Shown: positions 2,078 through 58,960 of the stretch, piece after piece
Position numbering within the stretch: position 1 is the stretch's first letter
How the letters are laid out: the number at the start of each line of letters is the position of its first letter
IMG/VR virus record: IMGVR_UViG_3300010938_000951
Span: 186,001-250,000 of that record
Strand: one strand, 5' to 3'
DNA: 64,000 bases
Notes under the pieces: generated by a model
Told to the model about the DNA's origin: nothing
Database searches by the model: none
Seen by the model: only the letters and a program-made list of their open reading frames with translations
Program-made: the position numbers and the translations under genes

Positions 2078-2091
2078 CAATAATAACATAT
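2078..2091 (+). promoter_or_regulatory. motif B candidate (late-type) promoter CAATAAT-AACA-TAT
   Basis: 7 nt upstream of ATG 2099, which has no SD; the same motif occurs at six other gene starts. Confidence 0.55.
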
Positions 2092-2098
2092 TTTTATT

Positions 2099-3517
2099 AT
2101 GGAAAAGACCGCCCGAAAACCATCTGCTGACCCAATTCAGGAGAAATTAAGACAAAATAAAGCCAATTGGAACAAAGATGTGTCTGCATTTGTGAATAAT
2201 CTTATTCATCTAAAAAAGATGATGAATGGCTGGCCATCCAAGTTTTTCAAAGAGCGCTCTCGTATTACCGATCCTATTCCGGCGGATCCAGCAACTATTA
2301 TTGGTTCATTGGCGGGTGATTTTCAAGAGTTAGCCCAGAGAGGCAATGCTCTTGTACAAGAACAAATTGACTACTCAAAAAATCGTCGTAAAAGACAACC
2401 AAAGCAATTAAATCTACCACTTCAACAACCAGAGCAATCTCCTCAAGCTCCGGAGGCGCCAAAACCTCCAACACCAGATTTATCAAAGCAACTTTCATTG
2501 GGACTAAATGCTTCAAGTGAAAATACTAAGTTATTTAAGTTAGCGTCTGAGATGGAAGAAAAATATTTTCTCGAATCACAGGCATCAAACCCATTTACTC
2601 GTTTTATTGCTAGATTATTTAATCCAAAGTTTGGGTTTGGTGAGGCAGCTCGTATGCGTCGTTTGCGCATGACAATGTTAGATGGTTGTGCAAAGACTTT
2701 CAAAACTCTTAAAGAATTGCAAGCTACAGTAGTTAAATCTTCAGATGCCAGCATAGAACAGTCTCATAAAATGATGACCATGGCATGGAACAATTGGAAC
2801 ATTGTTTATAGGCTTGTGTCTGCTTTTAAAGGACTTAAACCAGGAGATATTAAAGAGTCCGGCGGAGCTATTGAAGATCCCGAATTAAAACGTCAAAGAG
2901 CCATTGAAGAGGGCCGAGATCCAGATGAATCCACAGAATCTCCGGCCATACCATCATCTCAAATAGTTTCAACGCTAGCTAGTAAGATAAAAGATTTCCG
3001 TGGAAATGCTACTTTTATTGGCGCAACTGTAAGTAATCCACAATTTAGAAACATGGTTTCTTTAATGGAACGACTTGCTGCTATGCCAAAAGGTAAAAAT
3101 TTATCAGTTGATGAAATTGCTGAAATAGAGAAAAATTATAATGAAGCCTTAGTGGCTACTGCTAAAGAATTAGGATTTTCCAATATGAGTTCTTTTAGCC
3201 ATATAGCTCAAACGATGGTTACTGTGGCAAATTCTCCAAAGAAAGAAGCGCAAGAATTACGTGGCTATCTTGGTAAGACAAGACATCAATTAATTCCAGG
3301 ATCAACCTCCGGCTCTAGGTTAGAGATTTATAACCTTATTGGTCAAACCAAAAAAGACATAGATGCTTTAATGGATTTGCTTGAAAAAGGTTTTGAGCGT
3401 GAAAAAATTGAAACGTTAGTGGGCCAAATTCATCGTCAGATGTCTGCTTTGCGTACTATGATTCGTTCTCTATTATATTCTACGAAACCAGAGAAAGCAT
3501 CTTCTCCATTTTTCTGA
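2099..3517 (+). CDS. hypothetical multi-domain helical protein with two clamp-binding-like motifs and K-x-A sites
   Basis: 472 aa; Pro-rich linker containing QLNLPL and QLSLGL; EKTAR, FKLAS and KKEAQ at segment borders. Confidence 0.8.
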   Translation: MEKTARKPSADPIQEKLRQNKANWNKDVSAFVNNLIHLKKMMNGWPSKFFKERSRITDPIPADPATIIGSLAGDFQELAQRGNALVQEQIDYSKNRRKRQPKQLNLPLQQPEQSPQAPEAPKPPTPDLSKQLSLGLNASSENTKLFKLASEMEEKYFLESQASNPFTRFIARLFNPKFGFGEAARMRRLRMTMLDGCAKTFKTLKELQATVVKSSDASIEQSHKMMTMAWNNWNIVYRLVSAFKGLKPGDIKESGGAIEDPELKRQRAIEEGRDPDESTESPAIPSSQIVSTLASKIKDFRGNATFIGATVSNPQFRNMVSLMERLAAMPKGKNLSVDEIAEIEKNYNEALVATAKELGFSNMSSFSHIAQTMVTVANSPKKEAQELRGYLGKTRHQLIPGSTSGSRLEIYNLIGQTKKDIDALMDLLEKGFEREKIETLVGQIHRQMSALRTMIRSLLYSTKPEKASSPFF

Positions 3518-3524
3518 GGCAAAC

Positions 3525-3929
3525 ATGGAACAAGGATATGTTTATTTACATGATAATGTCTTTCCTACATTGCTTGCCATTTCACAGGATGAGCAGTCAC
3601 GTGGTCTAATGCATCAGGAATGGCCTCCACCAGTAATGTCGTTTGTATATGGCATGCCACAGTCTAATAGATTTTGGATGAAGAATACACCAAGCCCCTT
3701 AGATATTGTGTTTTGTCATAAAGGTAAAGTGGCAGAAATTTGTTTTGGTGAACCTCACTCAACTGAAATTATTGGCACTCAGATTAGTGATCTTGTAATT
3801 GAGCTACCATATGGAACAGTAGATTCGATAGGTTTGAAGGTTGGGCAAGCGGCCGGACTTATAAAGCCTACACAAGAAGACCTGCGCAAAATTTTTGCTA
3901 CAAAATACGGACTATTTGTAAAATTCTGA
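3525..3929 (+). CDS. DUF192 (UPF0127) family protein
   Basis: EQSRGLM, FWMKNTPSPLDIVF and VIELPYG motifs. Confidence 0.85.
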   Translation: MEQGYVYLHDNVFPTLLAISQDEQSRGLMHQEWPPPVMSFVYGMPQSNRFWMKNTPSPLDIVFCHKGKVAEICFGEPHSTEIIGTQISDLVIELPYGTVDSIGLKVGQAAGLIKPTQEDLRKIFATKYGLFVKF

Positions 3930-3935
3930 TACCCC

Positions 3936-3963
3936 TTGCATTATTAATTTGTAAGATTATATT
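3936..3963 (+). promoter_or_regulatory. sigma70-like promoter TTGCAT-16-TATATT
   Basis: Intergenic, 12 nt before ATG 3976; same geometry as the site upstream of dnaE. Confidence 0.4.
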
Positions 3964-3975
3964 GATGGGTACGAC

Positions 3976-6296: not shown

Positions 6297-6757
6297 AATA
6301 TCCGACAATTAGGCTTCCACCAAAAACTGAAGTGATTAAGATAAATATTTCGGAATCTTTTATGACCCGTGCTCGCTGCAAAGAATGTGGTAAAGGGCCT
6401 GATTACTACTATGCAACTATGAAGCCTTTTATGTGGAAAGAAGTCAAATATTTTATGATCTTTTCTGAGTTTTCTAAAAAGTGGTTTTCGAAAAACTCTG
6501 GTTGGTTTAAAGATTTCGAACCTCGCTATTTTACAAAGGCTGGAGATTTCTCTCGTCGATTAGAAGATAAATCATATAATCCTATTGTACATAGAACAAA
6601 AGGTGCGGATATTAATGACCGCTATAATGTTGTAGAATATATTGGTTGTGGATGCGGCGCTACTATATGGGCATTTAATAATGTTTCAGTACAAAAACGT
6701 CCAGAAATTACGAGCCGAAAGGGTCGATATAAATACCCTCAGAAGTTTTCATATTGA
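6293..6757 (+). CDS. hypothetical protein with Cys pairs
   Basis: ATGA overlap with the previous gene; CKEC and CGC. Confidence 0.6.
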   Translation: MKYPTIRLPPKTEVIKINISESFMTRARCKECGKGPDYYYATMKPFMWKEVKYFMIFSEFSKKWFSKNSGWFKDFEPRYFTKAGDFSRRLEDKSYNPIVHRTKGADINDRYNVVEYIGCGCGATIWAFNNVSVQKRPEITSRKGRYKYPQKFSY

Positions 6758-7154
6758 GTTTTGGCAAGCGCTGGCGAACTTGTTCTTCGAGAAATAAGAA
6801 ATCATCAGCCAATTCTTCAAATAATTTCCATTCACGGTTAATAAGCTTGTAGCAAGAATAATAAGAAAGTCTAGCTACAGTATCATAATATTCTTTGCTT
6901 GCAAATTGAAGATGTTGCGGCGCAATTGTATTGGCAAAAAATATCCAATCTCCTAAATTTTGGTAGACCAAAAAATCTTGTTTGTCACGGGCTTGCGCAA
7001 ACAACAAAGTGACACTATCTTTGGATAAGTCGAACTCGGCGGTCTTAAATTTTCCATAAATGCTAACAATGTATGCTTTTGTATCACGTTGGCACTGGAG
7101 ATCGTTTAGTAGTTCTTCAAAGAAACTACTAATGTTTCTGTGAAATACATCCAT
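6708..7154 (-). CDS. conserved hypothetical protein of bacterial type
   Basis: LGDWIFF...EYYDTVARLSY...LFEELADDF resembles an uncharacterised bacterial family (from recall). ATG 7154 is preferred over TTG 7166 because motif B lies 6 nt upstream. Confidence 0.7.
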   Translation of the reverse strand: MDVFHRNISSFFEELLNDLQCQRDTKAYIVSIYGKFKTAEFDLSKDSVTLLFAQARDKQDFLVYQNLGDWIFFANTIAPQHLQFASKEYYDTVARLSYYSCYKLINREWKLFEELADDFLFLEEQVRQRLPKLNMKTSEGIYIDPFGS

Positions 7155-7160
7155 AAGATG

Positions 7161-7174
7161 ATACAAGAATATTG
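7161..7174 (-). promoter_or_regulatory. motif B candidate promoter CAATATT-CTTG-TAT
   Basis: Minus strand, 6 nt before ATG 7154, no SD. Confidence 0.55.
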
Positions 7175-7190
7175 AAAGACTCGGTGATAA

Positions 7191-8993
7191 ATGAAGACAT
7201 TAGTGATAGTAGAATCGCCAGCTAAGGCAGAAAAAATTCAAGGTTATTTAGGCAAAGACTATATTGTGTTGGCCAGTAAGGGTCACATTACTGATTTGGC
7301 TAAAGGCGGTCGATTTGGTTTGGGAGTTGATATTGATAAAGACTTTCGGCCACACTATGTTTTACAAGAAGATAAAATAGACACTTTAGACATGTTATTG
7401 AAAGCCACCAAGAAGTGCGATAACATTCTAATTGCAAGCGACCCCGATCGTGAGGGTGAAGCTATTGCTTGGCATCTTCAGGAGCGTTTAAAAGATACTG
7501 GATTACCAATTAAAAGAGTGGTTTTCAACGAAATCAAAAAAGATAAGGTTCAGAAGGCCATTAAATCTCCACGAGATGTAGATATTAATTTGTTTCATTC
7601 TCAAGAAGCCCGCCGCATACTAGATCGTTTAGTAGGATTTATGGCCTCACCATTTCTTATGAACTATTTTGGCCCGAAACTTTCTGCCGGTCGTGTTCAG
7701 TCTGTCGTTACTCGTATGGTTATTGACCGTGAGCGTGAGATTGAGGCTTTCGTTCCAGAAACTTTTTGGACTATCAGTGTTATGCTGGCTCCAGCTACAA
7801 ATATGAAGCACGGTTTCATGACTAAGTTTAATGGTCGCCCAACTGATGAAAAAATAGCCAAGTCAGTAAAAAGTACTTTGGATGTTGATCCGTATATTGT
7901 ATCAGAGGTTATTTCTGATGAGGAAGCAAAATATCCTCAACCACCTTTGGTAACTTCCACATTGCAACGAATTATGTCAAAACAGCATGGGTTTAGCGCT
8001 GATCGTACCATGAAAGCTGCGCAATCTCTATATGAAAATGGATATTGTACATATATTCGTACTGACTCTGTTCGAGTTGGCGATGAAGCCTTAGAAGATG
8101 TTCGTAAGTGGATCCAAGATCATAAGTACGGCCTACCTAAGAAGCCTTATTCTTATAAGAATAAGGATGCAGCACAAGATGCTCATGAATGTATTAGACC
8201 ATCGGATTTGACTTTAGAGCCTAATAATAACTATGCAATGGTTGATCCTGATGAAAAGTTGGTGTATGAGACTATTTGGAAGTATTTTGTTGCTAGTCAG
8301 ATGATGCCGGCCATCTATGATACAATGAAAGTTACTGCTCATATTAAAGGAGATCCAACTCATGAGGTGAAAGCATCTGGTAAAGCCCTTAAGAGTCAAG
8401 GATTTTTGGAAATCTTGGGCGTGCAAGATGATTCTAAAATTGATATCCCTGTACTTAAAGTCGGTGATATTCTAAATCGTTTTGGTAAAAATCCGGTTCA
8501 ACTAGAAAAGAAGCAGACACAGCCGCCACCAAGATATTCTGAAGATAAGCTTATTAAAGAATTAGTTACCAAGAATATCGGTCGTCCAGCCACTTATGCT
8601 GAATTGCTAAGTAAGATTAGTTCTCGCAATTATGTTGAGAAAAGGGGCAATGTCTTCCACGCTACAGATTTGGGCAAGAAAATTACCGATGAATTGATTC
8701 AGTTTTTTACTTTCATGGATTATGATTACACCGCAAAAATGGAACAACAACTTGACGAGATTGAAAGTGGAAAAGTTAATCATGTTGATATGTTGAAAAA
8801 GTTTTATCCTGAATTTAAAAAGGAGTTGGACAAGGCATATATTGGTCATGGCGCTAATATGTGCCCCAAATGTGGAAGTCCAATGTCTGTTCGTACAACC
8901 AAAACTGGTAAGTTTTGGGGATGCTCTGGATATCCTAAGTGTAAACACACTGTGAATATTACATCATCACAACCTGTAAATAATGTTGTTTAA
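7191..8993 (+). CDS. topA: DNA topoisomerase IA
   Basis: LVIVESPAKA, ASDPDREGEAIAWH, SAGRVQS, catalytic YIRTDS, GRPATY and a C-terminal CPKCG..C..YPKC ribbon. Confidence 0.97.
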   Translation: MKTLVIVESPAKAEKIQGYLGKDYIVLASKGHITDLAKGGRFGLGVDIDKDFRPHYVLQEDKIDTLDMLLKATKKCDNILIASDPDREGEAIAWHLQERLKDTGLPIKRVVFNEIKKDKVQKAIKSPRDVDINLFHSQEARRILDRLVGFMASPFLMNYFGPKLSAGRVQSVVTRMVIDREREIEAFVPETFWTISVMLAPATNMKHGFMTKFNGRPTDEKIAKSVKSTLDVDPYIVSEVISDEEAKYPQPPLVTSTLQRIMSKQHGFSADRTMKAAQSLYENGYCTYIRTDSVRVGDEALEDVRKWIQDHKYGLPKKPYSYKNKDAAQDAHECIRPSDLTLEPNNNYAMVDPDEKLVYETIWKYFVASQMMPAIYDTMKVTAHIKGDPTHEVKASGKALKSQGFLEILGVQDDSKIDIPVLKVGDILNRFGKNPVQLEKKQTQPPPRYSEDKLIKELVTKNIGRPATYAELLSKISSRNYVEKRGNVFHATDLGKKITDELIQFFTFMDYDYTAKMEQQLDEIESGKVNHVDMLKKFYPEFKKELDKAYIGHGANMCPKCGSPMSVRTTKTGKFWGCSGYPKCKHTVNITSSQPVNNVV

Positions 8994-9016
8994 AGAAAGA
9001 ACGAGTACCCTGATAC

Positions 9017-13586: not shown

Positions 13587-13623
13587 TTGGGCAATAATAT
13601 GGAATACCTATATACTTTCCCGT

Positions 13624-13630
13624 GATATAT
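13624..13630 (+). promoter_or_regulatory. motif A (T)GATATAT, extended -10-like
   Basis: 10 nt before ATG 13641, inside a CCTATATA/TATATAGG hairpin. Confidence 0.5.
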
Positions 13631-13640
13631 AGGAAGCACC

Positions 13641-14070: not shown

Positions 14071-14084
14071 ATGTTGGAATATTG
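14071..14084 (-). promoter_or_regulatory. motif B candidate promoter CAATATT-CCAA-CAT
   Basis: Minus strand, 11 nt upstream of the GGAGG SD of the 50-aa ORF. Confidence 0.55.
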
Positions 14085-14287: not shown

Positions 14288-14300
14288 TTACCCTTAGAAA

Positions 14301-14307
14301 GATATAT
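14301..14307 (+). promoter_or_regulatory. motif A GATATAT
   Basis: Exactly 8 nt before def ATG 14316. Confidence 0.5.
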
Positions 14308-14315
14308 AGGTAAGT

Positions 14316-18409: not shown

Positions 18410-20631
18410 GACCATCTAGATTATATGTAAAAGATTTTATGTGCTATGATGACGCGTATATTGATTTCTCACAATTCAATTCGGCTCTTATCATAGGCAA
18501 ATCAGATAATCCAGATGTTTCCAATGGTGTTGGCAAGACTACGCTTTTTAGAGCAATTGAATATGTTCTTTTTAATTACTCGGATGTTAATCTGGAAGAT
18601 ATTATTCGTGATGATGCTGATAAGTGCAGTGTAACTCTTGATTTTATTGTAGGTAACGAGGAATACAGAGTCACGCGCACACGCACGCGCAAGGGTACAA
18701 CCGATCTTACTCTTTACAAACGTACTGCGTTGGATGGCGAAGAAACAGAAGTATTGCATTCTATTAATGGAGATCGTTACATTCCCTTATTAGATGATGT
18801 AGAAAAATACTGGAAAGACATATCTGGACGTCGTGCCGCTGACACTGACAAAGAGTTAGCAAAACTAGTTAAGGTGAATTTGAAATCCTTTAGGATATTT
18901 ATTCACTTCTTACAACGTGATTTTGGTGGGTTAACAACAGCTACACCTGAAACGCGTAAAAAGATTTTGAAAGATGCTTTGAATTTAATTGTGTATTCAA
19001 AATTAGAAAAGCTTGCTAAAGAGAAATCGTCCGCCCTTCAAAAAGAGTCGGACAAATTTCGCACACTCATCAACAGCTTAGGGGATCCTGATGCTACTAT
19101 GGCAGAAATCTCTAGCAAATTAATAGATGTGGAAAAAGAAATTTCTAGTCGTTCACTTAAAGTTGGAGATTTAGAAGTTCAGATAAACGCAGCTAATGAA
19201 AATGTCAATAGGCTTGTTAATGAGCACTCTAATTTAGAAAGTAAATTCTCTAATTTGGTCGAGAAAGAACAATCTCTTAACGTAGAGAAAACCAAAATAG
19301 AAACATCTATTAAAGAATATACTACTAAAAAATCTAATGTTATTAAGGTTGCCCATGAGGCCGTAGCTGAGCTTAAACAATTGGAAGAAACTCAAATCAA
19401 ACTAGTTGATTTAGATTATAATCAAATAGATGTTCTTTCCGAAAAGATTGTTTCAAATAAAGAAAAAATAGCCCAACTAAGCCTTACTATTCAAAATGAT
19501 TTGGCAAGAGTCGATAAGTTAAGAAAACCTATTCCTGAAGATGGCGAATGTGAAGAATGTCGCCAACCAATTACGGCAGAACATAGAAAAATTTGCCAAC
19601 AGAAACTTGATCAGGAGTTGCGTGAGAAGCAGGTTAATATTCAGTCTTGTAAGAAGGATATTGCTGCATTGAATGCTGAAAATGCCGTTCATCAGCAAAC
19701 CATTAATACATTAACGCTTTCTAAACAGCACCTAGAAAGTATTAACAACAAAATCTCTGCCAAGAAAAAAGAAGTTACTGATAAGCGTGCCATTCATGAT
19801 GAGTATAAGGTATTATTGGATAAGTTTACCTCTGAATTAGAAGATAAAATTAAAGAGATGGATGCTATTACTGAGCAGCTTCAAAACTCTTCTGCGATTA
19901 AAGAGGCAAAAATTCTTGAAAAACAAATTCAAGAAGAGAGGCAAAAAGCAAAATCTATTGAATCACAGATTCTTATCAATAATAAAGAACTGAATCATTT
20001 TAATAGCACCAAAGCTGTTTTACAACATGATTTAAATCAAAGAATAGATGAAAAGCGCAAGAAAATAGAATATACAAAGTTGCTAAAAGAAATTGAAGAC
20101 AAGTTAGGTATGTACCCAGCAGTTGTTCAAGCTTTTTCTAGTACTGGTATTCCTAATTTGATTATACAAAATGTTCTTGATGATTTACAAATTGAGGCCA
20201 ATACATTGCTAGCTCAATTAAAACCGGGTCTACAATTATCTTTCTCAGTTGAGAAAACCGTAGAAAAGACAGGCGATCAAGCAGATACATTAGATATTCA
20301 TTATACCGTTAATGGTAAGAAACGATATTATGAAAATATTTCTGGGGCCATGCAATTAGCAGTTAACTTTAGTTTAAAGTTAGGTCTATCTTTCTTGTTG
20401 CAAAAATTAAGTGGCGTAGATGTTCGCTTCTTGTTGTTAGATGAGATTGATCAATCTTTAGATAAAGCTAGTGTAGATTTCTTTGCTGATATAGTGAAGC
20501 TCTTTTCTAAAGACTATACTATATTGGTCATTACTCATAATGATCGTTTGAAAGATAAATTCTCACATGCAGTGTTAGTGGAACAAGATATAAATATGGT
20601 ATCACGTGCGAAGGTTGTATCTTCGTGGTGA
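18406..20631 (+). CDS. sbcC: SbcC/Rad50-like SMC ATPase
   Basis: NGVGKTT, Q-loop LQRD, coiled coil with zinc hook CEEC, signature ISGA and LLLDEID. Confidence 0.92.
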   Translation: MRPSRLYVKDFMCYDDAYIDFSQFNSALIIGKSDNPDVSNGVGKTTLFRAIEYVLFNYSDVNLEDIIRDDADKCSVTLDFIVGNEEYRVTRTRTRKGTTDLTLYKRTALDGEETEVLHSINGDRYIPLLDDVEKYWKDISGRRAADTDKELAKLVKVNLKSFRIFIHFLQRDFGGLTTATPETRKKILKDALNLIVYSKLEKLAKEKSSALQKESDKFRTLINSLGDPDATMAEISSKLIDVEKEISSRSLKVGDLEVQINAANENVNRLVNEHSNLESKFSNLVEKEQSLNVEKTKIETSIKEYTTKKSNVIKVAHEAVAELKQLEETQIKLVDLDYNQIDVLSEKIVSNKEKIAQLSLTIQNDLARVDKLRKPIPEDGECEECRQPITAEHRKICQQKLDQELREKQVNIQSCKKDIAALNAENAVHQQTINTLTLSKQHLESINNKISAKKKEVTDKRAIHDEYKVLLDKFTSELEDKIKEMDAITEQLQNSSAIKEAKILEKQIQEERQKAKSIESQILINNKELNHFNSTKAVLQHDLNQRIDEKRKKIEYTKLLKEIEDKLGMYPAVVQAFSSTGIPNLIIQNVLDDLQIEANTLLAQLKPGLQLSFSVEKTVEKTGDQADTLDIHYTVNGKKRYYENISGAMQLAVNFSLKLGLSFLLQKLSGVDVRFLLLDEIDQSLDKASVDFFADIVKLFSKDYTILVITHNDRLKDKFSHAVLVEQDINMVSRAKVVSSW

Positions 20632-21267: not shown

Positions 21268-21617
21268 TAGAAAAGGCTATTAATACTTTCGTATATGCTC
21301 AAATGAGCGTTGAAGCCCTGAAAAAGAATTTCGTACCTAAATACCTGGCGACAGGAGAGCAAAAATTCTATCGCTTTCTAATCCTCTACGCTCTAAATAA
21401 ACTAATATATATTGAAAAAGGCTCCTTCAAGGGTAAATCACCCGAGTTGGAGTTTTTAGATTATTATGACCAATTCATAATTTTGTATAGAAGAGAAGGT
21501 GAGGATGTTTATCTTGAGCTAGCCCGAGTATTTAGAAAGGCAGCGCATAAAGTTTATCGAGTTATGTTAAAAAAGAATATGACCGAGAGAAACGCAAAAT
21601 TCCTCAATTTGGTATAA
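21240..21617 (+). CDS. hypothetical protein (true start may be ATG 21303)
   Basis: ORF track; a motif-B-like TAATACT-TTCG-TAT lies 8 nt before ATG 21303. Confidence 0.6.
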   Translation: MSDHTQNFLIEKAINTFVYAQMSVEALKKNFVPKYLATGEQKFYRFLILYALNKLIYIEKGSFKGKSPELEFLDYYDQFIILYRREGEDVYLELARVFRKAAHKVYRVMLKKNMTERNAKFLNLV

Positions 21618-39319: not shown

Positions 39320-39351
39320 AATTTCTTAGAAATTTTCATCTTTCCTCTATT

Positions 39352-39358
39352 GATATAT
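39352..39358 (+). promoter_or_regulatory. motif A TGATATAT(T)
   Basis: Intergenic, 35 nt before ATG 39394. Confidence 0.45.
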
Positions 39359-39393
39359 TGTGATTGTATCTTTTCTTTATCTAGGGGTCAAAG

Positions 39394-39834
39394 ATGGAAC
39401 GTAGAAAAAATCGCAGTGACAAATACCAGTGGGTTTTGCTTGAAACAGTTTGTTCAAATGATATGATGGAGGCGTTTTGCAATGAGGATAGTATCTCAGC
39501 AAGACTTAATCCGTTTGAATACAATGAGGACTTAATTGAATTAGAAGAGCAGCTCAAAAAAGAGTTTTGGAGGGTGGTTGATACTTTATTGACTCCAAGA
39601 CAAAGAGAAGTAATTAGACTTTATGCTGATGGCTATACCCAGATGGAGATAGCTAAAATGCTGAATGTAAATCAAAGCAGCATTACAAAAAGCCTTAACG
39701 GAAACGTAGATTATAAGAATGGAAAGAAAATCTATGGCGGGGCTAGAAAGAAAATCCGTAAGATAATTGAAAATGATGAGAAAATCAAGGATATTCTCAG
39801 CAAAATGGCAGAGTGTCGTGATGAAAAGTGGTAA
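39394..39834 (+). CDS. sigma-70 region-4-like HTH protein
   Basis: LTPRQREVIRLY..GYTQMEIAKMLNVNQSSI. Confidence 0.85.
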   Translation: MERRKNRSDKYQWVLLETVCSNDMMEAFCNEDSISARLNPFEYNEDLIELEEQLKKEFWRVVDTLLTPRQREVIRLYADGYTQMEIAKMLNVNQSSITKSLNGNVDYKNGKKIYGGARKKIRKIIENDEKIKDILSKMAECRDEKW

Positions 39835-39887
39835 TATTCTGAAATCTACGTAGTAGGTATATTGCCAATAAAGTACAGAATTAGTAT

Positions 39888-39901
39888 CAATATTACTCTA
39901 T
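39888..39901 (+). promoter_or_regulatory. motif B candidate promoter CAATATT-ACTC-TAT
   Basis: Marks the start of the head module, upstream of ATG 39938. Confidence 0.55.
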
Positions 39902-47795: not shown

Positions 47796-47810
47796 AACCA
47801 ATCATTATCA

Positions 47811-47839
47811 TTGCATACAACCGCATATTATCATATAAA
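47811..47839 (+). promoter_or_regulatory. sigma70-like TTGCAT-17-TATAAA overlapping motif-B variant GCATATT-ATCA-TAT (47823-47836)
   Basis: Intergenic, upstream of the GAGGT SD and ATG 47863. Confidence 0.5.
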
Positions 47840-49573: not shown

Positions 49574-49587
49574 GTGCTTTGCACTTA
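49571..49587. repeat. palindrome TAAGTGC-ttt-GCACTTA containing both convergent stop codons
   Basis: TAA 49571-73 (+ gene) mirrors TAA 49585-87 (- gene). Confidence 0.85.
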
Positions 49588-50091: not shown

Positions 50092-50117
50092 GGGTATATT
50101 TCAGAATATATCCATGA
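50088..50117. promoter_or_regulatory. palindrome TCATGGGTATATT-tcag-AATATATCCATGA containing both divergent start codons; candidate bidirectional promoter
   Basis: 13-bp arms with one mismatch; G(A/G)TATAT lies 14 nt before each ATG. Confidence 0.7.
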
Positions 50118-51991
50118 ACAATGATACTTATAAAGAAATGTTTTATAGGTTTAAGGATAAGCTAGCTAATCTTGATCCGGTAGAATTTTGCCAGAAACAT
50201 TTAACACTTGAAGGAGAGCCATTTTCTCTCGTAGGCAACGGGTATAAACCTTTCAGCGATATCTATAGATACATTGGAATTAAGGCATTAGAAAAAGATT
50301 CTAAACCAGTTATTCTAGTAAAGGGACGTCAGGTAGGTGCTACTACCATGGCAAGCGCCCTTGAAATGTATTTCATGGGCTCTGGTTTATTTGGAGATGG
50401 ATTCCGTCCACCAATTCGTGTTATTCATGCTTTTCCTCAATTAGAATTAGCGGCAGCTTATTCAAAAACTAAACTCAATCAAATGATTTCTCAGGCTAAA
50501 ATCCCTGAGGGAGCCGTAGAAAATAAAGCATCTCGTCCAAAGTCTTTCATGCAGCAATTGCTTGATACTACGACTGCTACTAATGACTCTTTACATTTTA
50601 AACAATTCTTGGGCGGAAATCACTTGTGGATTGAATCTACTGGTGTAGATGCCGACAGAATCATGGGTCGTACCGCTGATATCATATTTTTTGACGAGGT
50701 ACAGAAAACTACCAGTGTAGCTATTGGAAACGCGCTTAAAATTTTAACCAACGCCAAATATGGTAAGCCAACTAAAGGCGTACAAGTATTTTTTGGAACG
50801 CCACGTCGTAAGGGATCTGATTATCATAAGATGTGGCAATCATCATCTCAGCAGTATTATTATCTTGGATGCGAAAAATGCGAAAAGCATTTTCCTCTTT
50901 ATACTCCAGGTTCTGATGATTGGGAAAAAGTTTGGATTCACGGTATGATTGTTAAATGTACCCATTGTGGTCATGAACAAGATAAACTACAAGCACAAGA
51001 ACGTGGTAAGTGGGTTCCGCTAAAAGATCCAAACGATCCAGATTGCGCAATGGTTGGGTTTCATATTAACCAACTTTACATGCCAAAATTTACACGAGAA
51101 GATATTGAAAAAGAAAAGCCTGGTAAACATCCGATCAACACAGAGCGCGTTTTTCAAAATGAGGTTCTTGGAGAGTTTTATCAAGGTGATGCTACCCCAA
51201 TGTCTCCAGAAGACATTCGTGTAAATTGTGCCGATTTCGAAAGAAAATTTAGCCCTCGTATTTTGCCAGCTAAAGGTGTAACGCAACAATTAACTGTACT
51301 TGGAATCGACTACGGTGCACGTTCAGATTTGGAACAACTAGCAGACCCAGAAAGAGTAAGACCAGCAGGACAATCTTATAGTACAGCAGTTGTATTACAA
51401 ACAAAAGGCCCAAGTATACTATCAATTGAGTTTGCTACCAAATTTAAACGAAATGACATAGAAAGCAAAAAAGGTATAATTGATCAGTTGATGAGACAGT
51501 ACAGTATACAATTGGCTATTGGAGACATTGGTTATTCTAATGACTTCTCATCTCTATTGCATAATACATACGGAGATAGATACTTAGTGTCTCGTGCTCA
51601 TAATAAAGTTAATGAGCATGTTAAGTTCAATCATGAAGCTTTTCCAAAAGAAATTGTTTTTGAAAGAGATTTTTATATTAGTGAACTTTACGATCAAATG
51701 AAAAAAGGATTAGTTAGGTTTCCATATGGCGATTATGAGAAAATCGCATGGCTTATTGATCATTGTTGTAGTATGGAATTAAAACCATCTATTTCTAAAT
51801 ATGGAGATCATACAGTACATTATGTTAAAGGCGGCACTCCAAACGATGGATTTATGGCATTATTAAATGCTTATTTGGCCTATAAATTCCTGGTAAGTCG
51901 AGGGTTTACAAATAATAATCCAACATTACACAATACTAAAAACTTGACGAAACCTATGGTAATTACTGGCTATGTACCTAGGAAGTTCTAA
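50114..51991 (+). CDS. terL: terminase large subunit
   Basis: VKGRQVGATT, FFDEVQ, FGTP, CEKC/CTHC, GIDYG, DIGY and NDG..ALLNAY. The start is ATG 50114, not 49946. Confidence 0.92.
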   Translation: MNNDTYKEMFYRFKDKLANLDPVEFCQKHLTLEGEPFSLVGNGYKPFSDIYRYIGIKALEKDSKPVILVKGRQVGATTMASALEMYFMGSGLFGDGFRPPIRVIHAFPQLELAAAYSKTKLNQMISQAKIPEGAVENKASRPKSFMQQLLDTTTATNDSLHFKQFLGGNHLWIESTGVDADRIMGRTADIIFFDEVQKTTSVAIGNALKILTNAKYGKPTKGVQVFFGTPRRKGSDYHKMWQSSSQQYYYLGCEKCEKHFPLYTPGSDDWEKVWIHGMIVKCTHCGHEQDKLQAQERGKWVPLKDPNDPDCAMVGFHINQLYMPKFTREDIEKEKPGKHPINTERVFQNEVLGEFYQGDATPMSPEDIRVNCADFERKFSPRILPAKGVTQQLTVLGIDYGARSDLEQLADPERVRPAGQSYSTAVVLQTKGPSILSIEFATKFKRNDIESKKGIIDQLMRQYSIQLAIGDIGYSNDFSSLLHNTYGDRYLVSRAHNKVNEHVKFNHEAFPKEIVFERDFYISELYDQMKKGLVRFPYGDYEKIAWLIDHCCSMELKPSISKYGDHTVHYVKGGTPNDGFMALLNAYLAYKFLVSRGFTNNNPTLHNTKNLTKPMVITGYVPRKF

Positions 51992-52015
51992 AGCGCCTAA
52001 ATACTGAGCTTTACT

Positions 52016-52022
52016 GATATAT
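52016..52022 (+). promoter_or_regulatory. motif A TGATATAT
   Basis: Intergenic between TerL and portal. Confidence 0.4.
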
Positions 52023-52068
52023 CATATTTTGTGTATTCTAGTAGAGGGTATAGTGGAACAGAGGTTAC

Positions 52069-53943
52069 ATGGCTGGTATTAAAAAATCGGGATTAGGAGA
52101 TCATCCGTCCTTTTCAGCAAAGTTCTTACAGGGCAGATCCACCACCCCTCAAGTAAGTGCTATTATGGCTCAGGGTGTTTCTGGAGAAAGAAGAGTTATT
52201 CTTTCAGACGAAGTAGACCAAGGATATTTTAGAGACGGTTCTGGGCCAAGTTTAAATAAAATGGCACTAAATTCTCCCACAAGTGCTTCAAATGTAGTCT
52301 CTTCAGTGGGTTTCAAGAAAAATGCTCAAGTAGTTTCTTCAGTTGGAGGAATGTTTCGTGGTATTCATGGAGATTCCGTTAAGCAAACTCCTGAAGTATA
52401 TTCCCCTCTTTGGCTTAATAGTAATCTAAACCTTCCCAGGGACCGTGCAACAATCAATGCATGGTGTCGTAGCTTTTTTGCTTTAAATCCATTTGTACAC
52501 AATGCTATTAGTTTACATAGCACTTATCCTATTAGCAAGCTTTCTATTAAATGTCCAAACAAAGATATTGAAAAATTCTTTGATGATATGATTGAAGAAA
52601 TTGATTTAATGAATATTTGCGTACAAATTGCCCAAGAATATTGGCTTTTAGGAGAAGCATTTGTTTATGCAGAATTAGATGAAGGTAAAGGCAAGTGGAG
52701 TCGCCTACACATTCAGAATCCAGATTTTATGCTTGTCAAACGTACGGTTGTAGCAAGCGAACCAATCATCATGCTTCGTCCTGATGAAAACCTCAAAAAA
52801 ATTATTTTCTCAAATCGTCCAACTGATATTGAACAACGTAAACAATTAAATCAACACATCATTGATTCTGTTAGACGTGGTGAAAATATTCCACTAGACA
52901 ATTTCCACGTATCACATTTGGCTCGTCGTATTAGTCCATACGAAATCAGAGGCACAGGATTACCTGTTTGTATTTTCCGTCAGTTAATGTTATTCGACAA
53001 ATTGCGTGAATCTAAATATGCACAGTCTGATAATATGATCAATCCATTGACTTTGGTTAAGATTGGTTCGGCTGATTATAAGCCAACTTTTGCTGACCTA
53101 GAAGCTTGGAGAAGTGTATTTGAAGAAGCGCAGTACGATAAAGACTTTAAGATATTTACCCATGAAGGAGTAGCGGTTGAAAGAGTAGGTTGGGGACAGG
53201 GAATCTATGATATCTCTGGAGATATTACTCAGCTACTTAAAGAAATTTTTATTGGGTTATTCGTACCACCTGTTATGATGGATGGTGGCGATACTACCAC
53301 TTATGCTAATGCTGGTGTAGCTTTGGACGTTCTTCGTCAGAGGTACATGCAGTTCCGTAACATGATGTCCATTTGGTTAAAGAATAAGATTTTTGCTCCA
53401 ATCTCCAAAATTCAAGGGTTTTATGACTACTCTGGTGGAGAGAAACAACTTATTGTTCCTGAAATTGATTGGAATCACATGTCATTATTTGATGCTGGAG
53501 ATTATATCAATAGTTTAATGACATTATCTCAAGGACAAGCGGATCAAAAGAGAGTATCTATTCATACTCTTTATCGTTCATTGGGTCTTGAGTACGAAGA
53601 TGAAGTACGTAAAATGCGTAAAGAAAATATTCAAAATGCAATTGCTAAGAAAGAAATTGCCGCGTTAGATCAAATGGATCTAAATGCTCTTCGTGCTTTG
53701 GATGATGAGGATGAAATTCCAGAACCAAAACAACCGGGTGCTGGACAAGAACAACCAGTACCAGGAGAGATGCCAGGAGGAGCACCGGGTGGATTACCAG
53801 ATTTGGGTCTACCAGGCGGTGGCCCTCCACCACCTCCACCACCAGGTGGCGGTGGACCTCCACCACCACCTCCTCCGCCACCAGAAGGCGGTCCACCAGG
53901 CGGTGGACCTCCAGCAGGCGGAGCACCTCCACCAGCTCCATAA
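52069..53943 (+). CDS. portal protein with Pro/Gly-rich C-terminal tail
   Basis: Follows TerL; WCRSFF..NP.V.NAI, HLARR.SPYE.RG..LP and PLTLVKIG portal-type motifs; GAGG SD. Confidence 0.85.
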   Translation: MAGIKKSGLGDHPSFSAKFLQGRSTTPQVSAIMAQGVSGERRVILSDEVDQGYFRDGSGPSLNKMALNSPTSASNVVSSVGFKKNAQVVSSVGGMFRGIHGDSVKQTPEVYSPLWLNSNLNLPRDRATINAWCRSFFALNPFVHNAISLHSTYPISKLSIKCPNKDIEKFFDDMIEEIDLMNICVQIAQEYWLLGEAFVYAELDEGKGKWSRLHIQNPDFMLVKRTVVASEPIIMLRPDENLKKIIFSNRPTDIEQRKQLNQHIIDSVRRGENIPLDNFHVSHLARRISPYEIRGTGLPVCIFRQLMLFDKLRESKYAQSDNMINPLTLVKIGSADYKPTFADLEAWRSVFEEAQYDKDFKIFTHEGVAVERVGWGQGIYDISGDITQLLKEIFIGLFVPPVMMDGGDTTTYANAGVALDVLRQRYMQFRNMMSIWLKNKIFAPISKIQGFYDYSGGEKQLIVPEIDWNHMSLFDAGDYINSLMTLSQGQADQKRVSIHTLYRSLGLEYEDEVRKMRKENIQNAIAKKEIAALDQMDLNALRALDDEDEIPEPKQPGAGQEQPVPGEMPGGAPGGLPDLGLPGGGPPPPPPPGGGGPPPPPPPPPEGGPPGGGPPAGGAPPPAP

Positions 53944-53962
53944 TCTTTTAATTCAATTGAAT

Positions 53963-54020
53963 AACCCTCTCTTGTGAATAATCCAGCATTGTTTTAGCTA
54001 TTACGCACAAGTAGAGGGTT
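53963..54020 (+). promoter_or_regulatory. long hairpin occluding the SD of the 54025 gene and enclosing motif B (GAATAAT-CCAG-CAT, 53976-53989)
   Basis: AACCCTCT-CTTGTG pairs with CACAAG-t-AGAGGGTT (14 bp, one bulge). Confidence 0.65.
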
Positions 54021-54024
54021 TTCC

Positions 54025-55281: not shown

Positions 55282-55285
55282 AAAT

Positions 55286-56305: not shown

Positions 56306-56314
56306 GGAAACACA

Positions 56315-56710: not shown

Positions 56711-56713
56711 GCA

Positions 56714-57466
56714 ATGAGAAACCTAGATGATATTTTACAGCTTGCTAGCACTTATGAAGAACAGTGCATACAAGATTTGGTAAAAGTGGCGAAGATTCGT
56801 CAATTACCAGATGGTAAGTATCGTGTGCTTTCTCAAAAGGGCAAAGATTTAGGTACATATAAATCTAGAAAAGCTGCCGAAAAGCGTCTTCGTCAGGTAG
56901 AGTTTTTTAAACACTTAGACAAGTCTAAAGCTGATGATCAGGGCAATGCAATTGCTCCAATTGATTTAACTAGTGCTGATGAATTTAGTTACTCTGCTCT
57001 TATGAGAAAACTACGTCAAGAAGCCTCTCCAGAACAAGTTAGAGTATTTCTTACTATTTTTAAATCACAATTTGATAAAGCTGTCAAAAGTAAAGTTCAT
57101 AAACCAGAGAGAATAGCTTTACAAAATGCTATTATCAAGTTTCATAAGATACATCCAGTAAAACTTGATAAAAAGATGGTTAAATGTGCTGCTGTGGCTG
57201 AATTAGGAGATCCTGACAGTGTTGGTAGATATTTAGCTGATATTGTTAAATTCATGTTAGCTAGATTGCCACCTCAAAAGCGCCCAAGAGCAGCACAAGT
57301 ATTGAAACAAAAATTCACTGTAATGAGCGAGAATGCAATTGCAGGTAAAAACATGCCGCCAGCCGCTGTGTATGGTCAGGCAATTACTTTCGTTAAACAC
57401 GTTCTTTTCAACCAAGATGCCACATACATTAGAAATGTGTTGAATAGTTTGTCGAGGAACCTATGA
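56714..57466 (+). CDS. hypothetical protein with a basic domain of phage head-gene type
   Basis: KIRQLPDGKYRVLS.KGK.LGTY.S...A.KRLRQVEFFKH. Confidence 0.75.
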   Translation: MRNLDDILQLASTYEEQCIQDLVKVAKIRQLPDGKYRVLSQKGKDLGTYKSRKAAEKRLRQVEFFKHLDKSKADDQGNAIAPIDLTSADEFSYSALMRKLRQEASPEQVRVFLTIFKSQFDKAVKSKVHKPERIALQNAIIKFHKIHPVKLDKKMVKCAAVAELGDPDSVGRYLADIVKFMLARLPPQKRPRAAQVLKQKFTVMSENAIAGKNMPPAAVYGQAITFVKHVLFNQDATYIRNVLNSLSRNL

Positions 57467-58233
57467 TCAAAAGATTTCGCCCAGTAATTCCTGGGGTTTT
57501 GTATCGTGGGTCAGCTCCAACTCCACAAGATGTGTTAGAGTTAAAAGATAAACTAGGAATCAAAAAAATTGTCAGTTTAGATAAAAAAGCTGGTGAAGCT
57601 ATTTCTCGTGCTTGTAAAATGTTGGGTATTGATCAGGTAAAATTATATATTGAACATGATAGAAAAACACTTTACGATTTCCTGTCTCAAAATATGAGAA
57701 AATTATTTTTAGAAGACGGTCCTACATTTGTACATTGTCAAGAAGGAAAAGATCGAACAGGATTAGCTTGCGCAATGGTAAAGTGCAAATTTTTAGGAAT
57801 GAATCCAGAAAAAGCAATACAAGAAGCAAAATCACTAGGGTTTGGTATAGGTTTACCTCTTAATATAACGAATACTTACGAAAAGATAATACGTCATTGT
57901 AAGCCAGAGAAAGACACAAATAGTGCTGATATAGTGTCAAATGAAAGAGAATATAAGGGTGATAATCGCGACTCTTTTCTAGACGAAGCACATCAAGGAT
58001 CTTTTGCTCCTCACCTAGATCATACGCGCCAAAACCCAATGGACGCCGTCTACACTTATATAAATGATCAGTCGCCTACTCGTCAAAATTATCCAGATAC
58101 ATCATTATTTCGGTATGATCCTGAGAAGGGTGATGTAATTCCTAATGTTGGCGAATTTGATAATGATGCTGGACAAAGGGGATTCGGTCCAACAGAAAAC
58201 TACAATGGTTTCTTTTCAGAGGTAGGGCACTGA
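57463..58233 (+). CDS. Cys-dependent (dual-specificity/tyrosine) phosphatase with acidic tail
   Basis: LYRGSAP and HCQEGKDRTG (CX5R). Confidence 0.9.
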   Translation: MIKRFRPVIPGVLYRGSAPTPQDVLELKDKLGIKKIVSLDKKAGEAISRACKMLGIDQVKLYIEHDRKTLYDFLSQNMRKLFLEDGPTFVHCQEGKDRTGLACAMVKCKFLGMNPEKAIQEAKSLGFGIGLPLNITNTYEKIIRHCKPEKDTNSADIVSNEREYKGDNRDSFLDEAHQGSFAPHLDHTRQNPMDAVYTYINDQSPTRQNYPDTSLFRYDPEKGDVIPNVGEFDNDAGQRGFGPTENYNGFFSEVGH

Positions 58234-58896
58234 ATGATTAAAAAGTCTTATTCTGTACAAATGAGCTATGACGTGACTGATAGTGAAAGACATCAGGCAG
58301 AGAGAGCGCTTGTGTATTTTAAGGCCGCTGAAAAGTATTTGACACAAGCATCTGATCATTTGAACATTATGAAGACCCCTTTTAAAGATAATCCTGATAT
58401 GACACCAGATGATGTAATGAAAGCTCGTGCTGTTATTAGGCGTTTTCGTGATAAAGCCATTGAAAATTTTGATAGATTTAAGAAGGTCGCATTTGATTGT
58501 GTAAATTTAATGCAAACATTTTCTAGTGATACACAAACACTCAAATTGATGAAATCATTCATTTCATCAGTTGATGATTTAGAAGTTAGTGTTAATCAAT
58601 TTGCTGATTTATTTAATGATTTACAATCAAAGGATTTTGTCAAAGATGTAGTTTCTGCTATTGAATCTATTCAAAAACAGTGTGATGAGATTGATGAAAT
58701 CATTGATGAAAGAATAAAATCTCATATTCAAACAAATATCTTAGCTACTAGTTGGGTAGATTCAATTAGTAATGACTTGCAAATGAAAATAGAGAAGAAA
58801 ACCCCATTAATTGTGGATCTTTATAATCAAAGGCAAGAACAATTAAATGAAGCGGTGGAGGAAAGAAGCACAGGTTCAAGCCAAGAAAAATGGTAA
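58234..58896 (+). CDS. hypothetical helical-bundle protein
   Basis: 220 aa, all-helical pattern. Confidence 0.75.
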   Translation: MIKKSYSVQMSYDVTDSERHQAERALVYFKAAEKYLTQASDHLNIMKTPFKDNPDMTPDDVMKARAVIRRFRDKAIENFDRFKKVAFDCVNLMQTFSSDTQTLKLMKSFISSVDDLEVSVNQFADLFNDLQSKDFVKDVVSAIESIQKQCDEIDEIIDERIKSHIQTNILATSWVDSISNDLQMKIEKKTPLIVDLYNQRQEQLNEAVEERSTGSSQEKW

Positions 58897-58946
58897 TATC
58901 TCTGTATAATAGATAAAGTTTTCGGTTTTAAACCGGAAATTTGTAG

Positions 58947-58960
58947 CAATATTACATTAT
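58947..58960 (+). promoter_or_regulatory. motif B candidate promoter CAATATT-ACAT-TAT
   Basis: Upstream of the 58990 ORF and the protease gene. Confidence 0.55.

What the first reader, a model, noticed from the sequence alone, without database searches (positions are those of the whole stretch)
2078..58960. Recurrent bipartite promoter motif B: (C)AATAwT-N4-(T/C)AT
Seen at 2078(+), 7174(-), 14084(-), 39888(+), 47823(+, GCATATT variant), 53976(+, GAATAAT variant) and 58947(+), with a possible weaker copy at 21281. All are intergenic with a fixed 4-nt spacer. The motif precedes the starts of the head-module blocks, the isolated virion-like 2099 gene, and both minus-strand genes of the left arm, which need their own promoters. 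At 2099 and 7154 it ends 7 and 6 nt before an SD-less ATG, which is leaderless geometry. Inference: a phage late promoter read by a phage sigma-like factor.
Basis: partly seen in the sequence, partly recalled or inferred. Interest (0 to 1): 0.65.

Follow-up and report, generated by a model that had tools for sequence, protein, structure and literature searches.

The report
Conserved huge-phage promoter motif CAATAWT-N4-YAT
The repeated motif is real: it is a strand-specific promoter element, without a -35 box, that is conserved across a clade of uncultivated 200-480 kb soil and groundwater phages; these phages encode their own sigma factor, but who reads the motif and where transcription starts remain inferred.

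Summary
The window is bases 186,001-250,000 of a truncated 266.9-kb huge-phage record with 65 tRNA genes and no cultured relative.

**Observation: confirmed.** All listed copies exist.
- In the window alone the strict pattern is only weakly enriched: 6 matches against 1.95 expected.
- Genome-wide, AATAWT-N(k)-YAT in sense-strand intergenic DNA gives 15 hits at k=4. Other spacers give 0-5, apart from a TATAT echo at k=6. The antisense strand gives 3.
- Orthologous upstream regions in 10-49 non-identical relatives keep the motif and its 4-nt spacer at every listed site, including 21281.

**What it is.** It is most likely a promoter with no -35 box.
- It precedes virion-module blocks and two isolated minus-strand genes.
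- It precedes three genes with no Shine-Dalgarno (SD) sequence, where YAT lies 6-10 nt before the ATG.
- In five more complete relatives it precedes a 209-aa sigma-factor gene.
- At most tRNA operons it is fused in phase with an extended -10 element, TGnTATAWW.

**Interpretation: partly supported.**
- A phage sigma exists in the clade but lies beyond this record's end.
- The motif is not restricted to late genes.
- True leaderless geometry belongs to a second class, TATAWW-N7-ATG.

The register (which half is the -10 element) and the reading factor are unresolved without 5'-end data.

The parts
2078..2091 (+). Motif copy CAATAAT-AACA-TAT, 7 nt before the SD-less ATG of gene 2099-3517
   Evidence: Conserved in 10 relatives as (C/T)AATAAT-N4-YAT-N6-8-ATG.
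7161..7174 (-). Motif copy CAATATT-CTTG-TAT, 6 nt before the SD-less ATG 7154 of minus-strand gene 6708-7154. It lies in a 36-nt divergent gap with the topoisomerase gene 7191-8993.
   Evidence: TTTCAATAWT-N4-(Y/A)AT is conserved in relatives.
13592..13605 (+). Variant copy CAATAAT-ATGG-AAT directly after a terminator-like hairpin.
   Evidence: Conserved in relatives.
13623..13631 (+). Second-class element TGATATATA (extended -10 type), 9 nt before ATG 13641
14071..14084 (-). Motif copy CAATATT-CCAA-CAT, 20 nt before ATG 14050 (GGAGG SD) of a 50-aa minus-strand ORF 13898-14050
   Evidence: Conserved as nAATATT-N4-YAT in relatives.
14300..14308 (+). Second-class element AGATATATA, exactly 7 nt before the SD-less ATG of the deformylase-like gene 14316-14843 (leaderless geometry)
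21281..21294 (+). Weaker copy TAATACT-TTCG-TAT, 8 nt before the SD-less ATG 21303, in a 35-nt intergenic gap
   Evidence: Relatives carry GTATAWT-N4-YAT-N8-10-ATG at this position.
39350..39359 (+). Second-class element TTGATATATT upstream of the sigma-r4-like gene
   Evidence: conserved in most relatives.
39394..39834 (+). Gene for a 146-aa sigma-70 region-4-like / LuxR-type HTH protein; candidate trans-acting factor
   Evidence: Sigma70_r4 and r4_2 above cut-off. PHROG sigma-factor families. 85-99% identical among relatives. Fold matches to sigma region 4 and GerE are only weak.
39832..39845 (+). Variant copy TAATATT-CTGA-AAT, the first of a tandem pair.
   Evidence: GG(T/C)AATAWT conserved.
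39888..39901 (+). Motif copy CAATATT-ACTC-TAT, 36 nt before ATG 39938 (GGGAGA SD)
   Evidence: Conservation 8-9 of 10 over CAATATT and TAT in 22 relatives.
47803..47816 (+). Copy CATTATC-ATTG-CAT, the clade-conserved copy upstream of gene 47863-48939.
   Evidence: Consensus in 37 relatives is GATTATT-ATTA-CATATAA.
47823..47836 (+). Listed copy GCATATT-ATCA-TAT. Only moderately conserved; decays in distant relatives.
52014..52023 (+). Second-class element CTGATATATC upstream of the portal gene 52069-53943
   Evidence: TGATATAT conserved in about 50 relatives. Portal assignment.
53976..53989 (+). Motif copy GAATAAT-CCAG-CAT, 35 nt before ATG 54025. Relatives mostly carry TG-TATAAT-N3-G-YAT.
   Evidence: ATAAT and AT conserved in about 9 of 10 of 49 sequences.
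58894..58907 (+). Copy TAATATC-TCTG-TAT, the first of a tandem pair.
58947..58960 (+). Motif copy CAATATT-ACAT-TAT, 29 nt before ATG 58990 of a conserved 51-aa ORF that precedes the 1231-aa gene 59151-62846
   Evidence: Relatives carry TTGTrGyAATAAT-N4-TATAAT.
19805..19818 (-). Pattern match inside coding sequence with no downstream minus-strand gene. Treated as a chance match.

Best explanation
Motif B is a genuine promoter element of an uncultivated huge-phage clade. Its full form is (T/G)n-(C/T/G)AATAWT-N4-YAT(A), and it has no -35 box.

**Transcription units it heads:**
- the virion-module blocks of the window;
- two isolated minus-strand genes;
- three SD-less genes with very short leaders;
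- the clade's own sigma-factor gene (seen in relatives);
- most tRNA operons, where it is fused in phase with an extended -10 element (TGnTATAWW).

**Most likely mechanism (inferred).** Host core RNA polymerase is redirected by a phage-encoded specificity factor. The candidates are the 209-aa sigma found in all more complete relatives, the 146-aa sigma-region-4-like protein encoded at 39394-39834, or both. In this reading (register B) the heptamer (C)AATAWT acts as the -10-like recognition element. In relatives it is often a perfect TATAAT or TATATT. Transcription then starts at the conserved YA 5-6 nt downstream.

**Graded confidence.**
- Real, conserved, functional cis-element: about 0.95.
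- Promoter: about 0.85.
- Needs a phage-encoded factor: about 0.55.
- Register B, with the upstream half as the -10: about 0.55-0.6.
For: **Shown.**
- Spacer-specific, strand-specific intergenic enrichment.
- Conservation of both halves and of N4 at orthologous sites in 10-49 relatives with 30-90% protein identity.
- Ten of the 14 PWM >= 14-bit copies that lie upstream of tRNA genes end 8-17 nt before the tRNA 5' end. This rules out a translational role.
- The motif is the only conserved element in the 36-nt gaps upstream of the two minus-strand genes, which have no upstream gene on their strand.
- Host-type -35/-10 matches in the window are at chance: 57 against 60 and 66 against 64. Clear TTGACa-N17-TAnAnT promoters occur almost only in the left ~155 kb of the record (one more at the tRNA-Thr cluster, ~173 kb).
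- No conserved -35 lies upstream of the motif.
- No T7-type or beta-subunit polymerase genes are found in the record or in five relatives. For the T7-type family the search had no positive control.
- All five relatives encode a 209-aa sigma with regions 2 and 4.
- The r4-like protein is 85-99% conserved.

**For register B.**
- ATAAT is the most conserved block, about 9 of 10.
- It is TATAAT or TATATT in many relatives.
- The sixth base of the downstream hexamer is T in only about half of the sites, by my reading of the alignments.
- At genes 2099, 7154(-) and 21303 the YATnnn hexamer lies only 3-7 nt from the conserved ATG. A start 6-8 nt after that hexamer would usually fall at or beyond the start codon.
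Against: - No transcript 5' ends are available, because no RNA run holds the sequence.
- The sigma gene lies outside this truncated record, so its link to the motif is by clade, not by this genome.
- The motif precedes the sigma gene itself in all five relatives. That is awkward if this sigma is its only reader.
- At tRNA copies the downstream half is a textbook extended -10 (TGnTATAAT). At site 58947 in most relatives it is a perfect TATAAT. Both favour the rival register.
- The same extended -10 element alone drives the portal gene and the r4-like gene. So temporal classes cannot be separated by sequence.
- The composite PWM is not enriched in the distant relative G005.
Confidence: 0.55

Rival explanations
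1. Host-sigma reading (register A). The downstream YATAWW is an ordinary -10 hexamer read by the host primary sigma. CAATAWT, then at about -23 to -17, is an auxiliary upstream box. It would replace the -35 or the TG extension, either through sigma region 3 contacts or through a phage activator such as the r4-like protein.
For: - tRNA copies read TGnTATAWW with the motif fused at fixed phase.
- Their hexamer ends 8-17 nt before the tRNA 5' end, as expected for a start about 7 nt downstream.
- Relatives carry a perfect TATAAT as the downstream half at 58947 and TATAAC at the sigma gene.
- Promoter logic would be modular: a -10 plus either a -35, a TG extension or the CAATAWT box.
- It avoids the bootstrapping problem of a sigma gene driven by its own promoter class.
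Against: - At genes 2099, 7154(-) and 21303 the hexamer lies only 3-7 nt from the conserved ATG, so a canonical start would remove or clip the start codon.
- The base that would be -7T is T in only about half of the sites, while the third base T is nearly invariant. This is unlike sigma-70 -10 statistics (established knowledge).
- Window copies lack TG at -15/-14.
- From my own knowledge, a sequence-specific box at -23 to -17 has no precedent. It would collide sterically with sigma region 3.
- The variant at 13592 has AATACC as its downstream half.
Confidence: 0.3
2. Not a promoter. The motif would be an operator for a phage DNA-binding protein that overlaps real promoters. Alternatively it would be an RNA-level signal, such as a processing or cleavage site, at the 5' side of tRNA and mRNA units.
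For: - The AATATT core is palindromic.
- An inverted repeat with compensatory changes brackets the 53976 copy.
- The motif often lies next to hairpins.
- The second element, TGATATAT, could be the true promoter wherever both occur.
Against: - Strong strand asymmetry: 15 against 3 intergenic hits.
- CAATAAT is not palindromic.
- At 7174(-), 14084(-), 2078, 21281, 39888 and 53976 I saw no other conserved promoter-like element in the gap.
- The two minus-strand genes have no upstream transcription to be processed.
Confidence: 0.08
3. Chance recurrence of an AT-rich word in AT-rich intergenic DNA.
For: - Inside the window alone the relaxed pattern is not enriched: 12 against 8.9.
- One strict match is clearly coding (19805).
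- A CAATATT word at about 16590 lies in coding sequence.
Against: - Spacer specificity, strand bias, reversed-pattern controls and column-shuffled PWM controls.
- Conservation of motif and spacing at orthologous sites while the flanks diverge.
Confidence: 0.02

Closest known systems
T4-type late promoters (TATAAATA read by gp55 with gp33 and the gp45 clamp). Comparison from established knowledge; jumbo-phage sigma repertoire as described in PMC7824862.
   Same: - Short AT-rich -10-like element with no -35 box.
- Heads virion genes.
- Host core polymerase is redirected by small phage-encoded sigma-family proteins.
- The clade encodes both a small sigma and a single-HTH region-4-like protein. 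These are the two kinds of jumbo-phage sigma described in PMC7824862.
   Different: - The sequence is (C)AATAWT-N4-YAT, not TATAAATA.
- There is a second conserved half at a fixed 4-nt spacing.
- The clade's sigma has both region 2 and region 4, whereas gp55 is region-2-like only.
- The motif also drives tRNA operons and the sigma gene itself.
- gp33, gp45 and clamp dependence were not tested.
Extended -10 (TGnTATAAT) promoters that work without a -35 box, as used for the middle and late genes of Thermus phages such as P23-45 (from my own knowledge, not checked here).
   Same: - The tRNA copies carry TGnTATAWW and lack a -35 box.
- A switch from -35/-10 promoters (left arm) to -35-less promoters (right arm) is seen in this genome.
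   Different: - Window copies lack the TG.
- A conserved heptamer lies 4 nt upstream of the hexamer, which ordinary extended -10 promoters do not have.
T4 middle promoters (sigma-70 -10 plus a MotA box at -30, with AsiA); sigma appropriation.
   Same: Possible architecture of a host -10 plus a phage-specific upstream box that replaces the -35 (rival register A).
   Different: - The box would sit at -23 to -17, not at -30.
- There is no TGCTT-type sequence.
- No AsiA or MotA C-terminal domain was found in the record or in four relatives, although those searches had no positive control.
Leaderless-mRNA promoters (a -10 hexamer about 6-8 nt before the ATG).
   Same: The SD-less genes 2099, 7154(-) and 21303 have the motif at a short, conserved distance from the ATG.
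   Different: - The distance varies: YAT to ATG is 6-10 nt.
- It fits leaders of 8-12 nt rather than a start at the A of the ATG.
- The sharp N7 geometry belongs to the separate TATAWW class.

Membership tests
Canonical sigma-70/sigma-A -35/-10 promoter | TTGACA-like hexamer 16-18 nt upstream of the -10 hexamer | tested here: not met
   - No conserved -35 in either register.
- Consensus scan of the window is at chance.
- Only a few tRNA copies also have a TTGACA, for example genome 173014 and 51686.
Canonical sigma-70/sigma-A -35/-10 promoter | TATAAT-like -10 hexamer with -11A and -7T | tested here: inconclusive
   Both halves are -10-like. AATAWT keeps A2 and T6 in nearly all copies. YATnnn keeps A2 but has T6 in only about half.
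Extended -10 promoter | TG at -15/-14 of the hexamer | tested here: not met
   Met in the tRNA copies (G at PWM position 11 in 77%). Absent from the window copies: their N4 is AACA, ACTC, ATCA, ACAT or CCAA, and some have a TG abutting YAT instead.
T4-type late promoter system | TATAAATA octamer at -10 | tested here: not met
   The consensus is (C)AATAWT-N4-YAT. Only some relatives read CATATAAAT upstream of gene 47863.
T4-type late promoter system | gp55-like sigma (region 2 only) plus a gp33-like flap-binding co-activator | tested here: inconclusive
   Relatives encode a 209-aa sigma with region 2 and region 4. A 146-aa protein with only a region-4-like domain is also present. Orthology to gp55 or gp33 was not tested.
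T4-type late promoter system | Activation by a DNA-loaded sliding clamp | not testable with these tools
   Needs biochemistry.
T4 middle (MotA/AsiA) promoter system | MotA box centred at -30, plus MotA and AsiA genes | tested here: not met
   No such box. PF09010 and PF09158 are not found above cut-off in G000, G001, G002, G004 or G005, but neither search had a positive control.
Phage-polymerase promoter (T7-like or multisubunit phage RNAP) | A phage-encoded RNA polymerase | tested here: not met
   - PF00940 and PF00562 are absent from the record and from five relatives, three or four of which are 97% or more complete.
- The PF00940 search had no positive control.
- Divergent phiKZ-like, YonO-like or N4-like polymerases were not searched.
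Leaderless-mRNA promoter | Fixed distance of about 6-8 nt from the -10 hexamer to the A of the ATG, with no SD | tested here: not met
   Absence of an SD is met. The distance from YATnnn to the ATG is 3-7 nt, and from AATAWT to the ATG 13-17 nt. The separate TATAWW class meets the rule at N7.

The most novel reading that the evidence does not exclude
The motif is read as one bipartite unit by a minimal phage sigma, possibly together with the separate region-4-like protein as a split specificity factor. The two recognition elements would be only 4 bp apart, a promoter geometry not described for any sigma-70-family factor. At tRNA operons the in-phase fusion with a host-type extended -10 would form a dual promoter. 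Two polymerase forms would start about 10 nt apart, keeping phage tRNA synthesis on before and after the switch to the phage sigma.
Probability: 0.15. Interest if true: 0.7.

Novelty: new member of a known kind. Interest (0 to 1): 0.45.

Why it matters
Huge phages of soil and groundwater are known almost only from metagenomes, and their transcription programmes are unknown. This work gives three promoter classes for one large clade:
- host-type -35/-10 promoters;
- TGATATAWW;
- (C)AATAWT-N4-YAT.

Each class has exact sites. The clade also has candidate readers: a 209-aa sigma and a highly conserved region-4-only protein.

This allows transcription-unit annotation of relatives of 200-480 kb. 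It suggests how up to 65 phage tRNA genes are expressed. It also provides short templates for in vitro tests of sigma redirection without needing to culture the phage. The result is useful rather than surprising, because phage-specific promoters without a -35 box are a known kind.

Tried and rejected
- **Similarity searches.** Megablast of the window against cultured phages found nothing. TerL and DnaE reach only 25-33% identity to cultured phages, so no described promoter set can be transferred.
- **Expression data.** No RNA run holds the sequence. Only soil and groundwater DNA contigs hold small shares of it. Read laying was therefore not used, and no 5' ends are available.
- **Replication in the distant relative G005 (361 kb, 33% GC).**
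  - The G000-trained PWM is not enriched.
  - EM was dominated first by a 43-copy repeat and then by AT-rich noise.
  - Only the spacer profile gave a modest signal.
- **First EM script.** It timed out.
- **A third register** (hexamer = last 3 nt of N4 plus YAT, giving N6-7 to the ATG). Rejected, because the base that would be -11 is not A (C at 2078, T at 7174).
- **CAATATT at about 16590**, directly before ATG 16602. It lies in an ORF (16531-16710) that varies at synonymous positions, so it is coding rather than a promoter.
- **RNAalifold on the 53976 region.** It gave no consensus structure. A hand-drawn stem has partial support only.
- **Fold search of the r4-like protein.** There was no hit at E <= 0.001. 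Sigma region 4 and GerE matches have high probability but weak E-values, and mean pLDDT is 69.
- **AsiA, MotA, T7-type RNAP and RpoB family searches.** All were negative.
- **Major capsid gene.** It was not identified. PHROGs and Pfam found nothing informative for genes 47863 and 54025. So 'head module' rests on TerL, the portal and a protease-like segment only.

Full report
**Context.** The window is bases 186,001-250,000 (+) of a 266,899-bp IMG/VR virus record estimated 62% complete.
- About 91% of the crudely called ORFs (351 of 386) are on the + strand.
- GC content is about 38%.
- The record carries 65 tRNA genes, all on the + strand between 8 and 180 kb.
- The window holds several replication genes: a DnaE-type polymerase, an SbcC-like protein, a topoisomerase-like protein, a primase and a DnaJ. 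It also holds TerL, the portal and a protease-like segment.
- No cultured phage is close. Megablast finds nothing, and TerL and DnaE reach 33% identity at most.
- IMG/VR holds a large clade of relatives, with contigs up to 481 kb and TerL at 68-91% identity.
- Small shares of the DNA occur in soil and groundwater metagenomes. No RNA run holds it.

- Within the window the strict pattern is only marginally enriched: 6 against 1.95 expected, with 3 of 100 shuffles reaching 6. The relaxed pattern is not enriched.
- The whole record settles it. AATAWT-N(k)-YAT in sense-strand intergenic DNA gives 15 hits at k=4. Other spacers give 0-5, and k=6 gives 9, which is the TATAT echo of the same sites. The antisense strand gives 3.
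- 15 of the 26 forward hits are intergenic, although intergenic DNA is 7.6% of the genome (p = 6e-11).
- An EM search on intergenic DNA, not seeded with the motif, converges on sSAATAAt-n-tGnTATAwa.
- The resulting PWM scores 14 bits or more at 20 forward sites (15 intergenic) and at 2 reverse sites.

**Conservation.** I fetched orthologous regions from relatives and aligned the sequences upstream of the genes that follow each copy.
- The motif and its 4-nt spacer are kept while the flanks diverge. The sites and numbers of relatives are:
  - 2078: 10 relatives
  - 7174(-): 10
  - 14084(-): about 10
  - 21281: 11
  - 39888: 22
  - 53976: 49
  - 58947: about 30
- At 53976 the block ATAAT and the AT of YAT are conserved in about 9 of 10 sequences, while the three bases between are free.
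- At 47823 the conserved copy is the neighbour at 47803.
- Further copies appear at 13592, 39832 and 58894. The last two form tandem pairs with 39888 and 58947.
- A CAATATT word at about 16590 is coding, and 19805(-) is a chance coding match.

**What it does.** Four facts point to a promoter.
- Ten of the 14 PWM >= 14-bit copies that lie upstream of tRNA genes end 8-17 nt before the tRNA 5' end, so the signal acts on transcription, not translation.
- The two minus-strand genes sit alone among plus-strand genes. Each has a gap of only 36 nt upstream, in which the motif is the conserved element.
- Host-type -35/-10 matches in the window are at chance. Clear cccTTGACa-N17-TAnAnT promoters occur almost only in the left ~155 kb of the record; one more sits at the tRNA-Thr cluster, about 173 kb.
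- The orientation always follows the downstream gene.

**A second promoter-like class.** TGATATAWW emerged as the most enriched intergenic word. GATATATA occurs 12 times against 0.14 expected from coding frequency.
- On its own it precedes the portal gene in about 50 relatives, the sigma-r4-like gene, and genes 13641 and 14316.
- Perfect TATAAT, TATATA or TATATT hexamers peak exactly 7 nt before start codons. Eight genes show this, against 0-5 at any other distance. This is the true leaderless geometry of this genome.

**Who reads it?**
- Neither the record nor five relatives (83-100% complete) encode a T7-type polymerase or a beta-subunit-like polymerase.
- The record has no Sigma70_r2 hit. 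It encodes a 146-aa protein whose only recognisable domain is a sigma region-4 / LuxR-type HTH. This protein is 85-99% identical among relatives. Its fold matches to sigma region 4 are weak.
- All five relatives encode a 209-aa sigma with region 2 and region 4. In PDB and NCBIfam searches it is nearest to primary-like sigmas.
- By synteny offsets, that gene would lie about 80 kb beyond the end of this record (coordinates).
- In all five relatives the sigma gene is preceded, about 45 nt upstream, by TATCAATAAT-N4-TATAAC or a close variant.
- Jumbo phages without their own polymerase are known to carry both a minimal single-HTH sigma and a more complete one (PMC7824862).
- So a phage-encoded reader is plausible but unproven. 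The position of the motif before the sigma gene means either autoregulation or that the motif belongs to the class preceding sigma-dependent transcription.

**Which half is the -10?**

*Register A (YATAWW is the -10).*
- It is favoured by the tRNA copies, which read TGnTATAAT.
- It is also favoured by perfect TATAAT at 58947 in relatives.

*Register B (AATAWT is the -10, YA is the start).*
- The upstream half is more strongly conserved.
- In many relatives it is TATAAT or TATATT.
- A T at the sixth base of the downstream half is only weakly conserved.
- At three SD-less genes, 2099, 7154(-) and 21303, YATnnn lies only 3-7 nt from a conserved ATG. A start 6-8 nt after that hexamer would usually fall at or beyond the start codon.
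- Register B instead gives SD-less leaders of about 8-12 nt.

I favour register B at about 0.55-0.6. Under it, the tRNA copies would be in-phase fusions of two promoters.

**Verdict.**
The motif is a promoter and is probably dependent on a phage factor. It is not specifically late and not truly leaderless.
- It is a new member of a known kind: a phage-specific promoter without a -35 box.

Noticed in passing
G000 genome 8,441-179,348 (outside the window); tRNA-CTA at 176,544-176,700: The record has 65 tRNA genes, all on the + strand. Two have anticodon CTA (amber suppressors). TAG ends only 13 of 374 called CDS, and only 1 of 89 to the right of 186 kb. Twelve of the 13 TAG stops are followed by another stop within 1-18 codons, which suggests leaky or suppressed TAG.
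   Followed up: partly
G000 genome 1.5-155 kb, e.g. 2227, 16490, 57798, 93370, 148059; window 3941-3968: Host-type promoters cccTTGACa-N17-tAcAtT are confined to the left arm and the tRNA-Thr cluster. One look-alike, CCCCTTGCAT-N16-TATATT, is conserved upstream of window gene 3976.
   Followed up: partly
window 13623, 14300, 29652, 39350, 52014; genome 177178, 179351, 179831: Second promoter-like class TGATATAWW. GATATATA occurs 12 times in intergenic DNA against 0.14 expected. Perfect hexamers peak exactly 7 nt before SD-less ATGs, in 8 genes. The element is conserved before the portal gene in about 50 relatives.
   Followed up: partly
window 53967-53978 with 54006-54018: An inverted repeat (CTTrTG ... 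CAyAAG, extending to CCCTCT/AGAGGG with the SD) brackets the 53976 motif copy. Pairing is 67.5% against 32-51% in the slid controls, and 8 of 36 relatives show A-U to G-C swaps at one pair. Read-through transcripts could fold over the SD, whereas transcripts started inside the loop could not.
   Followed up: partly
window 52024-52068: The portal 5' region downstream of TGATATAT (ATTTAGTGTATTCTAGTAGAGGGTATAGTGGAA...) is conserved in about 50 relatives, far more than a plain leader would need.
   Followed up: no
window 49585-50091 (-) and 49946-51991 (+): A 168-aa minus-strand ORF sits directly in front of TerL. TerL homology in relatives starts at residue 51-63 of the ORF, so the real TerL start is probably downstream of the TTG at 49946.
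   Followed up: no
window 58990-59145: A conserved 51-aa ORF (MFIKHGDGKI...) lies between the 58947 motif and the 1231-aa gene. Its SD lies in a small hairpin.
   Followed up: no
window 16531-16710 and 16602-17219: A 59-aa ORF that varies at synonymous sites overlaps the 205-aa ORF in another frame. This could be a mis-called start or a frameshift.
   Followed up: no
relative G005 (loci L137-L155): About 43 copies of a 14-24-nt repeat containing CCCATCGGTCAACC are found, mostly intergenic. On the other strand it reads GGTTGACCGATGGG, that is, a TTGACC box.
   Followed up: no
loci L131-L135 (relatives G001-G005): A 206-209-aa sigma factor (regions 2 and 4) is conserved in all five relatives and missing from this truncated record. 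The motif lies about 45 nt upstream of its ATG in each.
   Followed up: yes
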